Shown here in pieces: positions 39,061 to 51,429 of a stretch of 64,000 nucleotides of DNA. Location: assembly GCA_016748015.1 (NCBI GenBank), contig JAAOMT010000620.1, forward strand, positions 457,391 to 521,390, read 5' to 3'. The notes below the pieces were generated by a model. That model was given only the letters and a program-made list of their open reading frames with translations. It did no database searches and was not told the DNA's origin. This stretch comes from Geosiphon pyriformis uo1 (Eukaryota; Fungi; Glomeromycota). How positions within the stretch are numbered: position 1 is the stretch's first letter; every line of letters starts with the position of its first letter. A program made the translations under genes and the position numbers.

Positions 39061-40709
39061 ATATGTTGTATATTTTAAGTTTTATATATATTTTAATATT
39101 GTTTTAATATGTTAATTAATTTTTGTTAAAAAAATATTTTTAAATTTTTTTTTAATTAAAAAAAAATTATTGTTTTAAAAATATTTTTAAAGTCAGATTA
39201 GTCATTTTTTTAATTGTATTGTTTTTAAGTAAATAATTATATATGATTTATTTTTTGGTTCTTAAATTTTACTTAATAATTAAAATATATTATTGTTATT
39301 TTTAATTTTAAAAAAATTTAAATACTATCATAATTAAAAATAATATTTTAAAAAAACATTATGTTTAATAAAAAACTTTTGATTAAATTATTTTTGCTAA
39401 TTAAATTTATTGATTTTTTAATTGTTATTATTATAATATTAATAAGTATTTTATTTGCTAAAAATTTTAAAATAAAAAATTATTATTATGAAAAACAGAT
39501 TAAAAAAATGATTAATCTTAAAGTAAAATAAAATATAAGTTGTTTATATAATAATAATATAAATATTAATAAAAACTTTATTAAAATAATGGTTTTTTAA
39601 AAGTTTTAAACATTAAATATTAAGTTTAATATTAATATAACTATTAAATAAATAACTGATTTGATTTTTAATAAAAATAATTTAATTGTAATTATGCATA
39701 AAATAATTTTTTGAATAAGTTTTTTTTTATTAATTCAATATAGTTTGAACTGACTTAAATAATAAAAAATGCATAAGTTATATTTATTTTAAACTTTATT
39801 ATAAATATATTATAATACATAATAATTAAATATTACATTAATTAAAACATGTCAATATTCTTATTAAAATAATATTTTAATTATTATTTTATAATTTATG
39901 TTAAAAATTTAAAAATTTAAAAAACTTTAATCTTAATAATTGATTTGTTTTGAATTGGATTTTTTTAATTGTTTTAACAATATAATCTAATTTAGTTTTT
40001 TTAATTTGGATTTATTGTAAAATTTATTATTAAAATTACGCTTAATTTTTTTATTAATAAATTTTAAAAATGAACATTTAATTTTAGAAATTTAAAATAT
40101 TTTAATAAAATAATTAATATTTAATTTATTTGTAATAATAATTTTTATAAAATTTTAATTAAAGTTTATAATATTTGTATTTTGTATAATTAATAATAAT
40201 ATTAAAATAATTTTTTGATTTTTGCAATATTTGCAGTTTTAAAAACCATTTTTTCACAATTGTTATAAATACCAATTTTTAAAAAAATTGTTTTTATTAT
40301 TAAAGTTAATAAATTTATTAATCAACTAATATTATTTTTTTAATTAAACTTGTATAAAATTAATAATTTATTTAATAAGACTTTTTAAAGAAATCATTTA
40401 AAAAAATCCTAATTTTTATTTAAAATTAAATTACAAAATAAATTGTATTTATAATTAAAATATGCATCATAATTAATTTACTTAATCAAATATTTTAAAA
40501 TTGAACATTTAAGTTAATTTAAATTATAATCTTTTAGGAAAATTTTAATTGAATAAAATCTTTTTATATAAGTAGCAAACAGATTACACTTATCGGGATT
40601 GAATTTATTTAATTTAGAATCTGTAAATATGCATTGATGAGTCATAAGTTGTTTGAAATAAATTTGCAGAAATCTCTACTTTCGAAACCAAATTCCTTTT
40701 ATTCACAAC

Positions 40710-42116: not shown

Positions 42117-43292
42117 TTACATCAGGGTACATTTGTCTAAATCGCCAGGGGAGAATTTTGGAACCCCTTGCTCATCTAGTTCCATATCTGGCGCCAATTC
42201 AGCGAGTATTTCAGAGGGTGGCTGACCAAAATCTTGCAACTATGAGAGAAAAAGTAGGGTAATCTATGAACTAATTACACAATTAAATCTTAATATTATA
42301 TTCATACCTTTTGCATTAAATCAAGTATCTTCTTATTGTGTTGCTCGTTGTTTTCTTGATAATCCGGTGCCTCGTAGAATGCCACGATTTTTTGAACATA
42401 TTCCGATTGATTTCGGAATCTTTCATACTCTTCCCGGGAAACTTTCTCCTTGTTTTCCTCGAGCCACTTCGGATACTTAATAATGAGGCCACCATTACAA
42501 TGGTAACGGGATTTATGGATAATACCTTTTCTAATTAATAAAGGGAAGATACTGAAGAGATTTTAAGAAGGCTTTCACATACCCTTGTTGCTAAATCTTT
42601 TATAGGTTCATATAGAATATCCTTTGAAGTAAATTGTTCCATCATTCCGTCAAAGGCATTTTGAAATTCTGCGTTGTCTGCTAAGTTCTCCATTTGTTTC
42701 ATCATTTCGGCTAGAAATTCTTCGTTGGCTTCTTCTGAGATTTCAGCCTAGTTAGATTTAATCATCAGAAACAATAGAAATGATGAAAAGCTCTCAATTC
42801 ATCGTTATTACTTACATCAACCTGATCCGAACTTTTTTGTAGTTTATTTATTGTTTGATTTATTTGTTCTTGAAAAGATTTTTTATTGCTACCCTCTTCG
42901 GTATGAAGCGACCCGTCGAAATCACTTTCTCCACTCTTCAAAAGTGCTTCAAAAGTTTCCCTTAATTCGTTGATATCTCCAAGACCATTTACAAGCGCTT
43001 CCATGTTAGCACTCAGTTGATCCACAAATTCCTCATTAGACCCATTTGAGGACTCTTGATCTGTAGAAGAACTTGGGTTGCTAGGAACGGGGGGAGTCGT
43101 AAAAGAAGTTGATTCAGAAGTTGAGCTGGATACTGTAGAAAAGTTGTCTAGAACATCTAAAAAGCAAGAAAATTGTTAATTGATGGTTTACTATTAATGA
43201 TCTCGGAGGGACTCCGAATACTAACTGTCAAGGAGGTCATCAAGGTCTTCATCGTCTTCCACAACTGTACATCTCTTATTGGGGGCTGCCAT
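42117..43292 (-). CDS. PEX19: Peroxin Pex19; exons 43292-43226, 43156-42816, 42747-42583, 42475-42308, 42239-42117
   Basis: N-terminal [51 protein letters not shown]; C-terminal CaaX box CTLM. Confidence 0.96.
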
Positions 43293-43854
43293 TCTAAAAG
43301 TTTTGTGGAGTTAATTCTAAAAAAAAAGCATAGAACAAGAAAGTAATCTTAATGATAAATTTTACCTGCTCAACTACATTTATATAATTCAATCGCATCC
43401 TTGATCTGTGTAACAATATATATTTTATTTTACTATACGTAGCATTGAGGGATATTTTAAGAGAAATCTTTTAATTGAAATCCATCTCAAGGAATGATAG
43501 CATTGCGGGAAAATGTTCTGGATTAGATGCAACCGTTTGATTTTGTCAACAAGTAAATCTCCATTTTATTACTTGAATTTTGACTGGTACGGATTTGCCC
43601 AATCGGAACCAAACCCAATAATAGCTATAATGTGAAAAATGTTTATCTAACGTCTTAAATTAAAGATCCTAATCGAGGTAGAATTTTATCCCTCACAGAT
43701 CAGATTCGATGTTACTAGCTACTATGTGTGATAAATATATACATAGGTCGATTTGATGTGATCCGACATTAAAGTGTTATGATACATAGAACGCGGTGTC
43801 GGTACCGTAAAAGTCTCGCTTGCCATCAATGCTAGGGTGGCTGCTTCGTTGTAA

Positions 43855-46537
43855 TCATTCAGATGGTGTTAAAAAACAATGGTAGGCATCAGTTAAATTT
43901 TTTATAAACCTTTGTAATAAATCATTATTTCCATTTTCGAATGGCTGGATATTTTCATGGAAATAATCCAAAATTATGGTCAACGCAGAGAGGTTAATTT
44001 TCGCGTTGGCTTGTCTACAATAAAAAGAAAAGATATTAAATCCGTTTATCAAACTAAAACTGCATAATTTTACAAAACGGTGAAAATACAAACTGCGGTG
44101 TATTTTTTGAAACATTGCACGGCGATACACAATATTTCACCTGTTGGGGTATTCGAGATGAAATAAATTATCGGGTATTTCTATTCATTAAAAAAATGAA
44201 CATCCCAAATATCTAACCACATACCATTGCGTCCATCAGAGAGAATGAGTTTGATTTTGGCCAAAAGCCTAGGACAATGTCAACTAACATAGGATTTTCA
44301 TCGAATTTCCTTTTGTGATTATCAAGATAAGCGACTATTACTTCGTTTCGAGACTCTTGGGACTTGTAATTGGTGAAGCATTCTGGAAAGGAAATTAACT
44401 CATAAGTAAATAACCAGAAGATTATAAATACAAGAGCTTATTAGTAATTCACGAACCTCGAAGAAACACGATTATATCGGCCACTATGTTGGTCAGATTC
44501 AGGACTATAGCATCATCACGAGGACAAATTAACCAGACAAAATAATTGATAGGGGCTTCAAGCTATGGAAATTTCCATTAAGACAACAAAGATTGAACCA
44601 TGCTGAGATAGGACGGCCTTCCAGGTGTAAAAATAAACTACCGCTTTGAGGCTTACAAGATAAAGCTCATAACTGAGGTTTACGAGAAATGGTAATACTT
44701 GAAATTATTAAAGTGATTTTTTCCTACTTACTTGCTTGATATTTGGATATTTATCCTGATCAAAAATTGCCGCAATAATCCAATGCCGCCATTTTGAAAA
44801 AGATAGTAGCAATATCCATACTTGTTTACGACGCCATTCATAGTCAACTGGCAATCCTTCCAGAAGCAATTTACGGCGAGCCAGATTAACCTCGACAAAA
44901 GATTCTGGACCAGCAATAACACTGTTAAGAATTGAAACTAAAAACTGAAAAGGTTGCCACAGATACTGGAAAAAGAATCTAAATTTAAATTAAATTTTAT
45001 TGAGGACAAATTGAGCGAACATTAGTTAACTTACTAGGGTGATATCTGCTGATATATCAACAATTTGCTCAAGCACGGATTGTGTAAAGTATGTCACTAA
45101 ACGAAGAATTCGCCAATCAGGAGTATCATCTATAAACTCGACAAAGACATCAATGCAACGAAGAAATATTCGAGAGCACATGAAAATGTGTTGAAATAAT
45201 TGTCCTTGTCGAAATAAAGCTTTTATATTCGTAGGTGATGTGTATTTATCAATGGGAAATAATAGTTGACCAAATAGTGTCATGACCTATAATAAAGTTC
45301 ATGAATTATTTTATAGTAGTCAACTAATTTTACAATACTAACAAATACTTACCTCATGTTCAACAACAAAGGGAAAGCAGGCCGACAGACTTTATATCGT
45401 GGTGAATATATGTTTAGCAAAATGAAAAGTTTAATAAGATATTTTAAGCAAAAGATACTAAAAACCTTAATATTCACACTGACCCTAGCTTCGATTCATT
45501 ACTAAGTTTTTGATGAAATTTGGAATTACAAAAAACGAGATTTTCCACAAAAAGAGCCGATAGATATTCATTCGAATCCCCTTTTGTCCCAGTACGTATG
45601 ATTTGATCAATCATATTTAAAGCATTCATATCCCCCAGTAAAGGAATACACTGTTCGGATAAAATTTTAATGGAATCTGCCTAAAAATCAGGAAATGGTT
45701 AATGAAATTTGGTTAAGAGAAAAAATGCCTAGAAAAACTTTACCGGGAGTAGTATGGATTGATTCTGGAGTGCCTCCAAACATTGAGTAATAATGCTGAT
45801 AGAACCCTCAGCTAAAGCCCGGTTGTTGCTGTAAGAATCGGTCAAACAAAAATCTTGAATTTTCCACACAGTCTGATTGCTCACAGGAATATTACGGCAT
45901 AAAAATAGCGATCGCAATTGGCGGAAACACCAATCATTTGATCTAAACTCCGATGAGTTCCAAAAAAGCATTTATATTCTGGTTAGACATAAGAAGACGT
46001 AAAAATCCGAAGGAAGCGAAATCAACAAACTTGGGTAAAATTTTGCAGGATTCAATGGAAAAATTATTAAAGATCTTGGAAAATTCGACTAGGCATTTAA
46101 CAATCAATTGGGAACTTGTTGGATGAAGGATAAAAATTCTGTTTCGCTAAATTTTTGATTTTGATTTTAGAAAAATAGGAAATGGTATAAACGTCATAAT
46201 ATAGATTGAATATCGAAATGACAAAGTACCGCTAACTCTGACAATAATCGGGCACCTTTGGGAAACATCCTTGCACATTCCTGAGCACTAGTACAGATTG
46301 AGAGTTGCTAAGGGATGTTTAATGAAATTAGTGAGCAAAATAAAGGTAACTTTTTTCAGCTCGGGAGTAAAGAGTTTTGAAACTTACCTCGTGAAACTCA
46401 TCTAAGAAGGAATTCACCTTATCAAAATTTTGTATTATATCTACGATTTCGGCGGTCTTTTCGTCTTTAGACCTTTTTGGGGCTGTTGCTTTAACCCGCC
46501 ACTTTGAGACCAGTTCTATGACCCCATCCCATTCCAT
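43855..46537 (-). CDS. FANCC: FANCC-like alpha-helical protein, ~577 aa; exons 46537-46388, 46307-46230, 46146-46031, 45942-45744, 45680-45484, 45389-45353, 45286-45035, 44965-44732, 44562-44457, 44382-44225, 44140-44094, 44014-43855
   Basis: Eleven GT-AG introns give a stop-free 1734-nt frame. Colinear blocks resemble human FANCC as recalled from memory (details in findings). The gene model is firmer than the family assignment. Confidence 0.72.
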
Positions 46538-46800: not shown

Positions 46801-47800
46801 GTATGTCATTTTCTCACTTGTGAACAAATGGCATTTTTTATACTCTTTATCACAACCCATCACAAATAATTAATTGAGTTATGCAAAAAAAAAAATATGG
46901 TTTCAAGTAGATTTATTCTTTGAATATTAAATATATATATATATATATCTATCAATCTATCTTTGATTTTCATTTTTATTATTATTATAAAAAAATGCTT
47001 TCTCGCAATAGATTGTAAATTAAAATATTAAAATATATTGTTTTAAATAAAAAAATAAAAGATTTAAAAAAATTACTTAAATAAATATATATATATATAT
47101 ATAATTATTTTATAAGATTACATATTTTATAATTAAATCTTAAATTTATTTATTTTATTATTTAAATTTATTCAAAAACAGTAGCTAAATTCCATTCAAA
47201 AAATATTTAAAGACTACATTAAAAAAATAAATATTATGATAAAAATTGAATTATCAATTCTTTTCCTTTCCAACAGTATTATAAATTATTTTAATGGTAC
47301 ATCTTTTCAAATTTGTTTATTTAATATATGCAATAAGTTCTATTCTTTCAATATTTAGAGCCTGTTCATTTATTTATTTATTTATTAATTTTTAACCACA
47401 AAGATTCTCAGGATTTCGAATATCTAATTTTAGAAATTCTATTAACAAAATATGAAGGTTTTAAAAACTGACTTTTTAAGTTGTGGGTTCAAGTGTATTG
47501 CTCTAATTCCGATTATATGTCTCTCGACTCTTCAAATTACCTGAAACCTTAAAATCAAAGAGGAATAATCAACTTTTAGCAGAATAATTTTACCTCAAAC
47601 TTTAAGAGATAAAATGAGTAGATTAAGAAAAGCAATTTGGTTAATTCAAATTTATATGATGTTTGGAATAGAAAAAATTAAGTTACATACAATCTTCAAT
47701 GAAAATAGAAGTTAGGAAAAAATTCCATTTTCACTTAATCTTAGTTTTTCTTATCTATACTACTATACAATCTATAGTCAATCCCAACTTGTTTATTAAT

Positions 47801-48769
47801 TTAGCTAAATACTCTTCCAACACCACTTGAAAATAGCTTTCCTACCCATCCGACATTCTGTGATGCAAAACCAGTGGCCCATTTTCGTTTTGCGTCCTTA
47901 TCACATTGAGTGTAACCTAAGACGTTGGCGAAGTTCAAGGTCAAGGCAACTGCAACTATCAATAACCATTTTGTGTCAAACCGAATGAGTGAAAGAAATC
48001 CACAGATGGCCCATAGTACGAAAGTTACATATAATGAAATCCAAAATATTCGTGAATCTGTGGGATTCACTGGACGTGATGGCTTGGAAAAGACAAAGAA
48101 ATCCTCATTAGAATGATAAATGAAGCATGAAAACAAAAAATAACGGTCATAATTTAAACTCACATCACGACTCTCAAACATCCAAACATTTTTACCGTCT
48201 TCTTGAATATCATTCCACCACCTCAATCCCACCAATAATCGTCCAGTAACGTTTTTAACTGTCCAAAAGTCAAAGGATAATAATAATACGCATGTGATAA
48301 AAATGAAAGGGAAATTACTAATGAAGAGACTCCCAAACAAATATACTAATAGTGCAGCACTACGAAAAAATAGATGAAACCCTAGGGCCACGGGATGGCT
48401 GAATCAAAAAGCTTGTTAGCCGAGCCAAGAAAAGCAGACTTCCAAAAAAAACCTCCAAGAGCTTTAGTTTCAGGAAACAAAAACCTAGACTGTTTCCAGA
48501 TGCTTTGATTACTATTACTTTGAGTATCACCAAAGCTACTGTTTGTGCCTCCTCCAGAGGGTGCTTCAATGTCACCTTCAATCCTAGCGAAGGGTCCAGC
48601 TTGTGAGAGAAGATTTGCTGTAGATTCCTATCATGTTGTAGTTTATTTAGCATCCAATAGAAGAGTCTAATGAATAAAGATAAAAATATATAATACACGC
48701 CATTTCACCCTCAGCTTTAGGTGCCTCAACGTTTACGGTTGTTGAAAAAGTTTGTTCTAGTTTAGACAT
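47801..48769 (-). CDS. TVP23: Golgi membrane protein Tvp23 (DUF846/FAM18); exons 48769 (or 48703)-48701, 48627-48485, 48398-48164, 48082-47801
   Basis: SHPVALGFHLFFR, LLLSFDFWTVKNVTGRLLVGLRWWN, WMFESRD, DSRIFW, NVLGYTQCDKDAK. The first exon requires a GC donor, and the start codon choice is uncertain. Confidence 0.93.
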
Positions 48770-49215
48770 TTCTGAAATTTTTTGATTTCTACGATTTTAA
48801 ACTGGTTATCCTATAAATAAAATTTTCTTTAACAATGACATAATCAAAAAATTAATTCGAAACCAAAAATATTCCGATATTGAAAAATAATAAAAATTTA
48901 ATAAATAACACAAATAATTTTTATATTTCAAATATTTCAAATATTTTTAAATTTCTTATTATAATATTAATTTTTGTTATTTAAACATTTAAAAATAATA
49001 ATACAACTTTGACATTAAATTTTTTTTTAAAAACAAAAAATCATAACAAAATTAACAATCATAACAGTAGCAAGTTTTTCTTTTTAAAACAACAATTTTG
49101 TATTTTTTGAGAACTTTTATACTGTAAATTATCCAATTTACTAATTTTAAAAAAAAACAATTAATTTCAATCGGGCTATAAACAATAAACACTATTTTCA
49201 ATTTAGATAACAAAA

Positions 49216-49249
<34 letters not shown>

Positions 49250-51429
49250 ATTTTTTTCTTTTTAATAACTAAAAAATTAATTTTTGGTTTTAATTTTTAA
49301 ATTTTTGTACATATTATGTATATGTATTTGTTTTGTTAACAAAATTATTGTTTTTCTAAAAAATATTTAACTGTATGATATTTTAAATTTAAATTTTTAA
49401 AAAAATTAAATTATTTAAAATTAAAAAATAAATTTTGTAAAAATATTTATAAGTAAATTAAATATAAAAAAAATATTCATAATAAATTTTTCTTTTTTAT
49501 ATTTTTATAACTATATTCAAAGTAAAAAATAGGAAAAAAATAACTTTTTTTATTGTTTTTAATAATTTTAATACTTAACCTATTTTTTAAAAATAAAAAC
49601 AGCTAATTAATGCTTTTATAAAATATTTTTTCTAAATAATTTGAATATAAAGCATTTTTTTGACATTTAAATAAAAGTTGTTCTGTATTTAAATAATTAA
49701 TTAAATTCAGTCTTAATGTAATTATTATTATTATTGTTATAAAGAATTTAAAAAACGTTTAATAATAAGTTAATAATAAAAATATTTGTTTTTATACCAA
49801 CTTTTTATTATTATTGTTAAAAAAACAATATTTTGATTTAAAACTTATTTTTTCTTTTAAAATAAAATAAAATATTGGTCTTTTCGGTTTTTTTGGTGTT
49901 TTTACCAACTTTATTACAATTATATCAATTATAATACTTATTTTTAATCTGTTTATAAATAATAATTTTTTTATTTTAAATAATAACAATAATAAAATAT
50001 TTATTAAATTTGGTTTAAATTAATACAGAATTAAATTGCTTAATATTTTAATTAATAATTAATTTTTACCAATTTTAAAAGTAAATTAAGTTATGATTTT
50101 ACATATAACTTTAATTAATTAACTTATTAAATTACTTAATCTTAAAAATTTAATTAATAAAATAAAAACCAAAATATTTTTTTCTAAAAAAGTTAGTAAT
50201 TTTAATAATATTTAAAAAACAAAATATTAATTATTAAAATTTTTTTAATGAGTAATTTTATTTTGATATTTAATAAAATTGTTAAAATTAATTAATTAAA
50301 AATTTGTTATATTTTTATTATTATTTTACAAATATAGTTTAATTATTGTTTAATATAATACAACAAATTAAGTATTTTAAATTAAACATAATTTATATAC
50401 TTGTTATATATAATTTATTAAAACTTTTTTATATAAAATTTGTATTTTAAATATTTTCAAATATTAATATTAAAATTAAATTTGTTAAATTACTTTTTTT
50501 ATTATTTTTAAAATTGTAAAAATTTTTTATAATATTTGTTTTGATAATTGTTTTTTTTATAATTGTTTTTAATAATATTTTATTAAAAGTTTTAGTTAAC
50601 AATATTAAAATTTACTGGTTTATAATAAAATAATATTGTATATTTTAAGCTTTGTTTGGTTTTTAATACTGTTTTTACTTGTTAATTAATTCTAATAAAA
50701 AATAATAATGTTTAAAATTTTCTTTTTTTAATCAAAAAAATTATTGTTAAATTATTTTTTAATTGTATTATTTTTAAAATTAATAATTAAACTTGTTATT
50801 TGTTAAATTAAATTATATATTTAATAAAAAACTTTTAAATATCAATATTATTATAAATATTAAAGTTTAAATTACTTGGTTATTAATTATTAAATTATTT
50901 TTTTGGTTTTTTAAATCTTTTTTAAATTTTTTATTATATCTAAAAATTTTAAAAAACCAAATCATTAATTTTAAAAAAATATATTTAAAAAAATAATTAA
51001 TATGAATTTAAATATATTATAAAAAACAATACCATTTTTTTAATTAAAAAAAATAAAAATTTTAATACTGTTTTTTTTATTAAAATTAATTAAAAAACAA
51101 AACAGTTTTAAAAACTTTAAAAATTTGAAATAACAATAATATATTGTTACAAATTAGTAAATTTTAATTTAATATTAGTAATTTTATTAAAAATTCCAAA
51201 AACATTTTTTATATTATTAATTAAAATATTTAAAAAAAAATATTATAAAATATAATAACAATAAAAAACAGATTTACTACAACAGTTTTTGTAATATTAA
51301 AAGTAATTAGCAAAATTAATTTTAATAATAGTATTTAAAAAAAAAGCTTTATATAAAAAATTTAATATTGTTTTTAATAAAATAAAAAACTAAATACTTT
51401 TTACTTTTTACTTTTTACTTTTTACTTTT

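What the first reader, a model, noticed from the sequence alone, without database searches (positions are those of the whole stretch)
43855..46537. Hidden 12-exon gene resembling Fanconi anaemia core-complex subunit FANCC in a fungus
Seen: manual splicing gives a 577-aa stop-free protein. Against human FANCC (558 aa, recalled from memory) the blocks are colinear: VNSFLDEFHEQL..RMFPKGARLLSELARNRIFILHPTSSQLIVKCL vs [54 protein letters not shown] vs LNSWIQGVL; ADSIKILSEQCIPLL vs PERVASLSRVCVPLI; NEYLSALFVE vs QEILQPEFFE; LVTYFTQSVLEQI vs TIQVFTQCFVEAL; VWILLLSFSKW vs SWFLFIHFGGW; FVWLICPRDD vs LAFYYGPRDG; and C-terminal helix LLQRFIKNL vs LARELLKEL, which keeps the Leu equivalent to L554. Known: budding and fission yeasts lack the FA core complex, and FANCC is best known from animals and, more recently, plants. 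Inference: this lineage may retain a FANCC-E-F substrate-receptor module and an animal-like crosslink-repair or anti-crossover pathway. I am not aware of a described fungal FANCC but cannot verify that.
Basis: partly seen in the sequence, partly recalled or inferred. Interest (0 to 1): 0.92.

Follow-up and report, generated by a model that had tools for sequence, protein, structure and literature searches.

The report
FANCC orthologue in a glomeromycote fungus

Summary
Observation confirmed. A minus-strand gene at 46537-43855 splices through 11 GT-AG introns into a stop-free 577-aa protein. Six of the 11 junctions are seen in spliced transcript contigs.

The window is Geosiphon pyriformis (Glomeromycota). 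The locus is already annotated as hypothetical protein G9A89_022473, but that model is wrongly fused to the downstream PEX19 gene.

Interpretation supported.
- **Orthologues:** full-length orthologues (34-47% identity) occur in Ambispora, Funneliformis, Rhizophagus, Gigaspora and Acaulospora, with a partial one in Racocetra.
- **Pfam Fanconi_C:** Funneliformis (E about 1e-12 to 1e-13, 48-50 bits) and Gigaspora (26.5 bits) pass the cut-off of 25 bits. The Geosiphon protein gets only a colinear sub-threshold hit (E 5e-4, 19.3 bits).
- **Structure:** two AlphaFold models each have 7kzp chain C (human FA core complex) as the only Foldseek hit below 1e-3. It scores Z 18.1 against 10.3 for the next of 48,161 chains. 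The only ESM Atlas match above TM 0.5 is the chordate FANCC cluster.
- **Pathway:** the genome also holds FANCD2, FANCI and FANCL. FANCE and FANCF were not found, but the method used also misses FANCC.

This is a new member of a known kind. Singh et al. 2023 reported a Rhizopus FANCC. The same scan noted unchecked FANCF and FANCB candidates elsewhere in this genome.

The parts
46388..46537 (-). Exon 1, aa 1-50. The start ATG at 46537-46535 is the first ATG after an in-frame stop; orthologues also begin MEW.
   Evidence: Identical to P0011. Donor GTAAGT at 46387.
46230..46307 (-). Exon 2, aa 51-76.
   Evidence: Its 3' junction (46230|46146) is seen in an RNA contig.
46031..46146 (-). Exon 3, aa 77-115.
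   Evidence: Both junctions (46230|46146 and 46031|45942) are seen in RNA contig record 2.
45744..45942 (-). Exon 4, aa 115-181.
   Evidence: The 5' junction is in the RNA contig. The 3' junction rests on the model and P0011 only.
45484..45680 (-). Exon 5, aa 182-247. It starts the best-conserved central region. Alone it gives the only Fanconi_C hit among the ten exons searched.
   Evidence: PF02106 E 0.058, profile 181-227. P0011:180-345 E 5.2e-4, 19.3 bits, profile 180-330. Donor GTCAGT was chosen by P0011 and the orthologue alignment.
45353..45389 (-). Exon 6, aa 247-259 (37 nt).
   Evidence: Matches P0011 and the orthologue motif FPFVVEHE. Not covered by RNA contigs.
45035..45286 (-). Exon 7, aa 260-343.
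   Evidence: Used as the query that found the orthologues. The 3' junction 45035|44965 is in the RNA contig.
44732..44965 (-). Exon 8, aa 344-421. It holds the most conserved block (aa 391-420, ten invariant columns).
44563..44731 (-). Intron 8, 169 nt, the longest. It is retained in the only transcript contig that crosses it; read-through stops after 7 codons.
   Evidence: table 8: record 1 runs unbroken over 44457-44965. The spliced join KYPNIKQ|LEAPINYF is conserved in orthologues.
44457..44562 (-). Exon 9, aa 422-457.
   Evidence: The 3' junction 44457|44382 is in the RNA contig. Orthologue alignment.
44225..44382 (-). Exon 10, aa 457-509.
   Evidence: Both junctions are in the RNA contig. 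They rule out my first, longer alternative using the donor at 44217.
44094..44140 (-). Exon 11, aa 510-525 (47 nt).
   Evidence: Both junctions are in the RNA contig.
43855..44014 (-). Exon 12, aa 525-577 plus stop TAA (43857-43855). The true C-terminus is RFIKNLTDAYHCFLTPSE (43911-43858).
   Evidence: The RNA contig is unbroken over 44014-43800 and runs 128 nt further. The C-terminal helix aligns with the Ambispora and Funneliformis ends. The annotated model instead splices out at 43911.
43672..43854 (-). 3' untranslated region, at least about 183 nt. The low end is inferred from the contig length.
   Evidence: record 1 has 128 letters beyond window position 43800.

Best explanation
This is the single-copy Geosiphon pyriformis orthologue of FANCC. 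It is an all-helical solenoid of 577 aa encoded by 12 exons and is transcribed.

By homology, it most likely works as in animals and plants. There FANCC is the scaffold of the FANCC-FANCE-FANCF substrate-receptor module and also touches the RING ligase FANCL. This positions FANCD2-FANCI for monoubiquitination during repair of interstrand crosslinks and stalled forks. In plants it also limits class II meiotic crossovers.

Shown here: the gene model, its expression, its orthology across Glomeromycota, its homology to FANCC in sequence profile and fold, and the presence of FANCD2, FANCI and FANCL in the same genome. Inferred only: binding to FANCE, FANCF and FANCL, and any role in FANCD2 ubiquitination or crossover control.
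For: Gene model and expression.

Organism and annotation: P0011 is identical over residues 1-559. The gene is single copy in the 128-Mb assembly.

Orthologues: 34-47% identity over about 490-554 aligned positions in seven other glomeromycote genera.

Pfam Fanconi_C (PF02106, cut-off 25 bits):
- P0006:40-440: E 3.5e-13, 49.6 bits.
- P0012: E 6.5e-13, 48.7 bits.
- P0015: E 1.1e-12, 47.9 bits.
- P0013:30-460: E 3.4e-6, 26.5 bits.
- P0010: E 5e-5, 22.7 bits.
- Own protein P0011:180-345: E 5.2e-4, 19.3 bits.
- All are colinear, with protein positions about equal to profile positions.

Fold:
- Foldseek against PDB puts 7kzp_C first, and it is the only hit at E<=0.001, for model 1 (E 1.2e-5) and model 2 (E 3.1e-6, TM 0.44/0.45).
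- VIA-align gives 7kzp_C Z 18.1 (393 aligned) and 9a0j_C Z 14.2; the next chain is 11.8.
- In an exhaustive search of 48,161 chains the next is 10.3.
- In the ESM Atlas shape search the FANCC cluster (PF02106 in 100% of members) has TM 0.56/0.58 over 439 residues; the next is 0.38.

Pathway partners in the genome: FANCD2 (E 8e-46), FANCL_C (E 1e-12), FANCI_S4 (E 1e-14).

Literature: human FANCC contacts FANCE, FANCF and FANCL in 7KZP, and a Rhizopus FANCC homologue exists (PMC10085685).
Against: - The Geosiphon protein itself stays under the Pfam cut-off. As a whole protein it gives no hit at all.
- Profiles of the glomeromycote family find no PDB sequence at E<=10, so the direct sequence link to human FANCC is weak (13% identity in the structural alignment).
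- The models are of middling confidence (pLDDT about 70) and TM to 7kzp_C is below 0.5.
- FANCE, FANCF, FANCA, FAAP100 and the FANCM MHF-binding domain were not found by six-frame Pfam search.
- The only transcript contig that crosses intron 8 retains it, which would truncate the protein.
- A language-model feature search put Neurochondrin first (0.92).
- The tools give only the entry title for 7kzp_C. That chain C is FANCC rests on its letter, its length (550) and my own knowledge.
Confidence: 0.88

Rival explanations
1. It is a true FANCC descendant that no longer works in a canonical FANCC-E-F module. In Glomeromycota FANCE and FANCF would be lost, and the protein would act with FANCL alone or in another process.
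For: No FANCE or FANCF match in the genome. The 2024 survey puts only FANCL and FANCJ among Glomeromycotina core proteins and reports FANCM as absent there (PMC11061109). FANCC is highly diverged (13% identity to the human chain).
Against: The same six-frame Pfam search also fails on FANCC at this very locus, so the blanks say little. First-stage notes list FANCF and FANCB candidates elsewhere in this genome, both unchecked. The protein is conserved along its whole length across Glomeromycota, as expected for a multi-partner scaffold.
Confidence: 0.08
2. It is a different helical-repeat protein, such as a neurochondrin-like ARM/HEAT protein, that only resembles FANCC.
For: The ESM Atlas feature search gives Neurochondrin clusters first: score 0.92, 179 shared features, 16 hits. 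Helical solenoids often give middling structural scores.
Against: No member of the family hits Pfam Neurochondrin at E<=10. Several members pass the Fanconi_C cut-off. FANCC stands about 8 Z units above every other solved chain and is the only Atlas shape match above TM 0.5. No neurochondrin appears in the ten Atlas shape rows shown.
Confidence: 0.02
3. It is a decaying or non-functional copy in Geosiphon: transcribed, but mainly as an intron-retaining, truncating RNA.
For: The one contig across intron 8 retains it. The Geosiphon protein scores lowest of the family members that hit Pfam Fanconi_C.
Against: The 577-codon frame is intact across 12 exons, with canonical splice sites. There is 46% identity to Ambispora, with invariant blocks throughout. 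Contigs show which forms are present, not which are absent, and this run is small (46 million letters).
Confidence: 0.02

Closest known systems
Human FANCC (Pfam PF02106 Fanconi_C; 7KZP chain C)
   Same: Same size (577 against about 558 aa). Same all-helical solenoid, colinear from end to end. It is the best structural match, and the only clear one. The Pfam profile aligns position for position over about 30-415 in orthologues.
   Different: Only about 13% identity in the structural alignment. The Geosiphon sequence is below the Pfam cut-off. Partners FANCE and FANCF are not yet identified in this genome.
Arabidopsis FANCC (At3g60310) and the Rhizopus azygosporus homologue RCH79564.1 (Singh et al. 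2023, PMC10085685)
   Same: These are also remote FANCC homologues found outside animals by sensitive profile or structure methods. The Rhizopus case shows that FANCC survives in early-diverging fungi.
   Different: Those sequences could not be fetched here, so no direct alignment or tree was made. The paper names Rhizopus azygosporus as its fungal example and does not mention Glomeromycota in the passages read. No function is known for any fungal copy.
Glomeromycote orthologues annotated as hypothetical proteins (Rhizophagus irregularis GLOIN_2v1715635, Gigaspora margarita F8M41_002634, Ambispora, Funneliformis, Acaulospora, Racocetra)
   Same: 34-47% identical over the full length, with the same start (MEW) and the same C-terminal helix.
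   Different: Only the Funneliformis and Gigaspora copies reach the Pfam cut-off. The Rhizophagus copies give no Pfam hit as whole proteins.

Membership tests
FANCC (Pfam PF02106 Fanconi_C) | The protein itself scores above the Pfam gathering cut-off (25 bits). | tested here: inconclusive
   The whole protein gives no hit. Sub-ranges 180-345 and 150-430 give E 5.2e-4 / 19.3 bits and E 8.4e-4 / 18.6 bits at the colinear profile positions 180-330. Exon 5 alone gives E 0.058. The hit is significant and is the only consistent family, but it is below the curated cut-off. Five sub-ranges were tried.
FANCC (Pfam PF02106 Fanconi_C) | Unambiguous full-length orthologues score above the cut-off. | tested here: met
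   P0006:40-440 49.6 bits, P0012 48.7, P0015 47.9, P0013:30-460 26.5. These are 35-41% identical to the Geosiphon protein over 506-549 aligned positions. P0015 carries PF02106 precomputed in the database.
FANCC | The fold superposes on solved FANCC better than on any other protein. | tested here: met
   7kzp_C has Z 18.1 against 10.3 for the next of 48,161 chains. Foldseek E is 1.2e-5 and 3.1e-6, the only hits at E<=0.001. The Atlas FANCC cluster has TM 0.56/0.58. Caveat: model pLDDT is about 70.
FANCC | Size and architecture: about 560 aa, entirely helical repeats, no other domain. | tested here: met
   577 aa. DSSP shows only helices. No other Pfam domain.
FA core complex / CEF module | Binds FANCE and FANCF; contacts FANCL. 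| not tested
   No FANCE or FANCF sequence could be identified. FANCL exists only as unspliced exons without a protein reference, so no co-fold was sent.
FA pathway | The genome encodes the ligase and substrates: FANCL, FANCD2, FANCI. | tested here: met
   FANCD2 on C608:372568-377415 (E 8e-46). FANCL_C on C590:198428-198684. FANCI_S4 on C546:616883-617751.
FA pathway | Required for FANCD2 monoubiquitination and crosslink tolerance. | not testable with these tools
   Needs genetics or biochemistry.
Neurochondrin (PF05536) | Match to the Pfam profile or the fold. | tested here: not met
   No PF05536 hit in any family member at E<=10. It is absent from the shape-search rows. Only the language-model features resemble it.

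The most novel reading that the evidence does not exclude
Glomeromycota, long thought to keep only a 'minimal' FA pathway, would in fact retain a working FANCC-FANCE-FANCF receptor module. They might retain more of the core complex too, with FANCF and FANCB too diverged for Pfam. The full FA core would then predate the fungi and have been lost stepwise in Dikarya. In these putatively rarely sexual fungi the module might also restrain crossovers, as it does in plants.
Probability: 0.45. Interest if true: 0.6.

Novelty: new member of a known kind. Interest (0 to 1): 0.5.

Why it matters
[quoted passage not shown] This locus and its orthologues in seven other glomeromycote genera show that the statement is wrong for FANCC.

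The work also shows why the gene was missed. HMMER with Pfam finds some orthologues but drops others that are 94% identical unless they are trimmed.

The finding extends the passing note on a Rhizopus FANCC (Singh et al. 2023) to a second major lineage. It supports the view that the FANCC-E-F module is ancestral to eukaryotes, and it points to targeted searches for fungal FANCE and FANCF.

Practically, it corrects a fused FANCC-PEX19 gene model in the public annotation.

Tried and rejected
- **Six-frame Pfam search of the genome with PF02106:** no match. This shows the method is blind to this gene, so the blanks for FANCE, FANCF, FANCA, FAAP100 and FANCM-MHF_bd are not evidence of absence.
- **Sequence searches against PDB:** exon 5, P0012, and profiles A1 and A3 gave no FANCC hit.
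- **My first gene model:** a length-maximising model of 616 aa had the wrong exon 5 end and wrong exons 8-11. It was rejected on the P0011 and orthologue alignments. The RNA junctions confirmed the exon 9-12 boundaries.
- **Neurochondrin lead from language-model features:** rejected on Pfam and fold evidence.
- **Word-index homologue searches:** these reached only Glomeromycota. No link to Mucoromycotina or animals could be drawn by sequence.
- **Co-folding:** none was sent. No FANCE or FANCF candidate was in hand, and FANCL has no spliced reference.
- **Joined model:** Exons were searched by reference. The joined form was built only inside a script, to count its length and compare it with P0011. 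Whole-protein work used database protein P0011:1-559 or 1-566 by id. The last 18 residues were searched only as part of exon 12.

Full report
**Anatomy**

The region 46537-43855 carries a gene on the minus strand. Three-frame reading and a search over GT-AG intron paths gave a first model. I refined it against the orthologues and the database protein.

The result is 12 exons, listed under parts. The CDS is 1734 nt, giving 577 aa plus a TAA stop. The 11 introns are 63-169 nt, all GT..AG, with 20-35% GC against 37% in exons.

**Organism and annotation**

A phmmer search with exon 7, sent by reference, found full-length relatives. A follow-up search found P0011, 'hypothetical protein G9A89_022473 [Geosiphon pyriformis]', 864 aa. 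Its first 559 residues are identical to my model. The window is therefore Geosiphon pyriformis (Glomeromycota, Archaeosporales). The assembly has 128.3 Mb in 792 contigs.

The annotated model leaves exon 12 at 43911. It adds a short exon at about 43626 and runs into PEX19, whose own ATG is at 43292 and whose product ends in CTLM. P0011 carries Pfam PF04614 precomputed in the database.

**Expression**

One public run (X1) holds spliced contigs. The joints 46146|46230, 45942|46031, 44965|45035, 44382|44457, 44140|44225 and 44014|44094 all have CT..AC ends on the plus strand, that is GT..AG on the gene strand. They confirm introns 2, 3, 7, 9, 10 and 11 to the base.

These joints also decide exons 10 and 11 against my first alternative. 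The contig runs unbroken from 44014 through the stop and about 183 nt beyond it. It shows no joint at 43911, which argues against the PEX19 fusion.

Intron 8 (169 nt) is retained in that contig, and read-through would stop after seven codons. Contigs show which forms are present, not which are absent, and the spliced join is conserved in orthologues. I take this as partial retention of the longest intron. Introns 1, 4, 5 and 6 are not covered.

**Family**

Orthologues were found in these species:
- Ambispora gerdemannii and A. leptoticha (46%)
- Gigaspora margarita (41%)
- Acaulospora morrowiae (38%)
- Funneliformis mosseae, F. caledonium and F. geosporum (35%)
- Rhizophagus irregularis and R. 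clarus (34-35%)
- Racocetra persica (a fragment)

The gene is single copy in Geosiphon.

Conservation runs along the whole length. It peaks at residues 181-270 and 391-420.

**Is it FANCC? Sequence evidence**

Against Pfam, the ten exons searched gave one family of note: Fanconi_C with exon 5, at E 0.058 and the colinear profile place 181-227.

Whole orthologues behave erratically:
- P0012 (F. mosseae): E 6.5e-13, 48.7 bits, protein 50-428 against profile 35-408.
- P0015 (F. geosporum): E 1.1e-12.
- P0010 (A. leptoticha): E 5e-5, 22.7 bits.
- P0006, which is 94% identical to P0012: nothing as a whole protein, but E 3.5e-13 once trimmed to 40-440.
- P0013 (Gigaspora): nothing as a whole protein, then 26.5 bits when trimmed.

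The Geosiphon protein gives nothing as a whole. Residues 180-345 give E 5.2e-4 (19.3 bits) against profile 180-330, and residues 150-430 give E 8.4e-4. The Rhizophagus proteins give nothing as whole proteins.

So the family is FANCC by Pfam's own cut-off in two genera. The Geosiphon member sits just under it. This patchiness explains why surveys based on Pfam missed the gene.

**Is it FANCC? Structural evidence**

Two AlphaFold2 models were made, from 6-sequence and 11-sequence alignments. Both have pLDDT of about 70, with pTM 0.54 and 0.74, and both are all-helical.

- Foldseek against 350,542 PDB chains puts 7kzp_C (human FA core complex) first, and it is the only hit at E<=0.001 both times: E 1.2e-5 and 3.1e-6, about 595 alignment columns, TM up to 0.45.
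- VIA-align gives 7kzp_C Z 18.1 over 393 residues and 9a0j_C (FA core complex, chain C) Z 14.2. The best unrelated chain scores 11.8.
- A Foldseek-independent search of 48,161 representative chains gives 18.1 against 10.3. This is above the level of about 13 that the tool warns is common for helical repeats.
- The ESM Atlas shape search returns one match above TM 0.5: the cluster 'FA complementation group C' (PF02106 in 100% of members, Chordata), TM 0.56/0.58 over 439 residues. The next match is 0.38.

The tools show only the entry title for 7kzp_C. That chain C is FANCC rests on its letter, its length (550) and my own knowledge. The Atlas hit names FANCC explicitly.

**The rival family**

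A language-model feature search ranked Neurochondrin first (0.92). No family member matches the Neurochondrin profile, and no neurochondrin appears in the shape-search rows. I reject it.

**Pathway context**

Six-frame Pfam searches of the genome find FANCD2 (seven exon matches, best E 8e-46, C608), the FANCL RING-like C-terminus (C590) and FANCI (C546).

FANCE, FANCF, FANCA, FAAP100 and the FANCM MHF-binding domain gave nothing. The same search with Fanconi_C also gave nothing at this locus, so these blanks carry no weight.

First-stage notes of this scan list a candidate FANCF (s1-495898) and a candidate FANCB (s1-486712) elsewhere in the genome. I could not locate or test them.

**Mechanism**

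In the human core complex, FANCC directly contacts FANCE, FANCF and FANCL. In Arabidopsis, FANCC-E-F form a complex that limits class II crossovers (PMC10085685).

By homology, the Geosiphon protein most likely scaffolds the substrate-receptor arm that presents FANCD2-FANCI to FANCL. This step is inferred, not shown.

A 2025 preprint reports that Geosiphon is the exception among Glomeromycotina in keeping Pol zeta (10.1101/2025.09.02.673565). From general knowledge, Pol zeta acts in translesion synthesis downstream of the FA pathway. FANCC is nonetheless kept in AM fungi that, by that preprint, lack Pol zeta.

**What is known**

Singh et al. [quoted passage not shown] In the library searched, no other paper mentions both FANCC and Glomeromycota. 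The database already carries PF02106 on the F. geosporum protein.

**Verdict**

This is a new member of a known kind. It is a useful correction to the literature and to the public gene model, not a new kind of system.

The joined spliced model was not sent to any search tool. Exons were searched by reference, and the database protein P0011 was used by id. Joining was done only inside a script, to count the length and compare the model with P0011.

Noticed in passing
window 42120-43911 (minus strand): The public gene model G9A89_022473 (P0011, 864 aa) fuses FANCC to the downstream PEX19 gene. PEX19's own ATG is at 43292 and its C-terminus is CTLM at about 42120. The fusion uses a donor at 43911 and a small exon at about 43626-43594. 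The transcript contig shows no such joint.
   Followed up: partly
window 44563-44731: Intron 8, the longest at 169 nt, is retained in the only transcript contig that crosses it, which would truncate the protein after residue 421. This may be regulated or inefficient splicing.
   Followed up: partly
window 44928 and 45079: The transcript contig reads G where the genome has A on the plus strand, which is U to C on the mRNA strand. This is not the A-to-I pattern, so it is probably allelic or strain variation.
   Followed up: no
proteins P0006 / P0012 / P0013: Pfam detection of Fanconi_C is erratic. P0006 gives no hit as a whole protein but E 3.5e-13 when trimmed to 40-440, while its 94%-identical relative P0012 hits as a whole. 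P0013 behaves like P0006. This is probably a HMMER filter effect, and it explains why Pfam-based surveys miss fungal FANCC.
   Followed up: partly
G000:C608:372568-377415 (-); C590:198428-198684 (+); C546:616883-617751 (-): FANCD2, FANCL and FANCI genes are present in the same genome, each split into several exons.
   Followed up: partly
window 40000-40500, 47000-47500, 49000-50000: Blocks of extreme AT richness (GC 9-16%) flank the genes, whose regions are 31-38% GC. This may fit the transition-type hypermutation of repeats that another first-stage note reports for this window.
   Followed up: no
protein P0011:1-566: The ESM Atlas language-model feature search ranked Neurochondrin clusters first (0.92, 179 shared features, 16 hits), although sequence profiles and fold both say FANCC. 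This is a caution for reading that tool on helical-repeat proteins.
   Followed up: yes
window 47801-48391 (minus strand): The upstream neighbour is a 196-aa open frame that looks hydrophobic and membrane-protein-like by eye. It was not identified.
   Followed up: no
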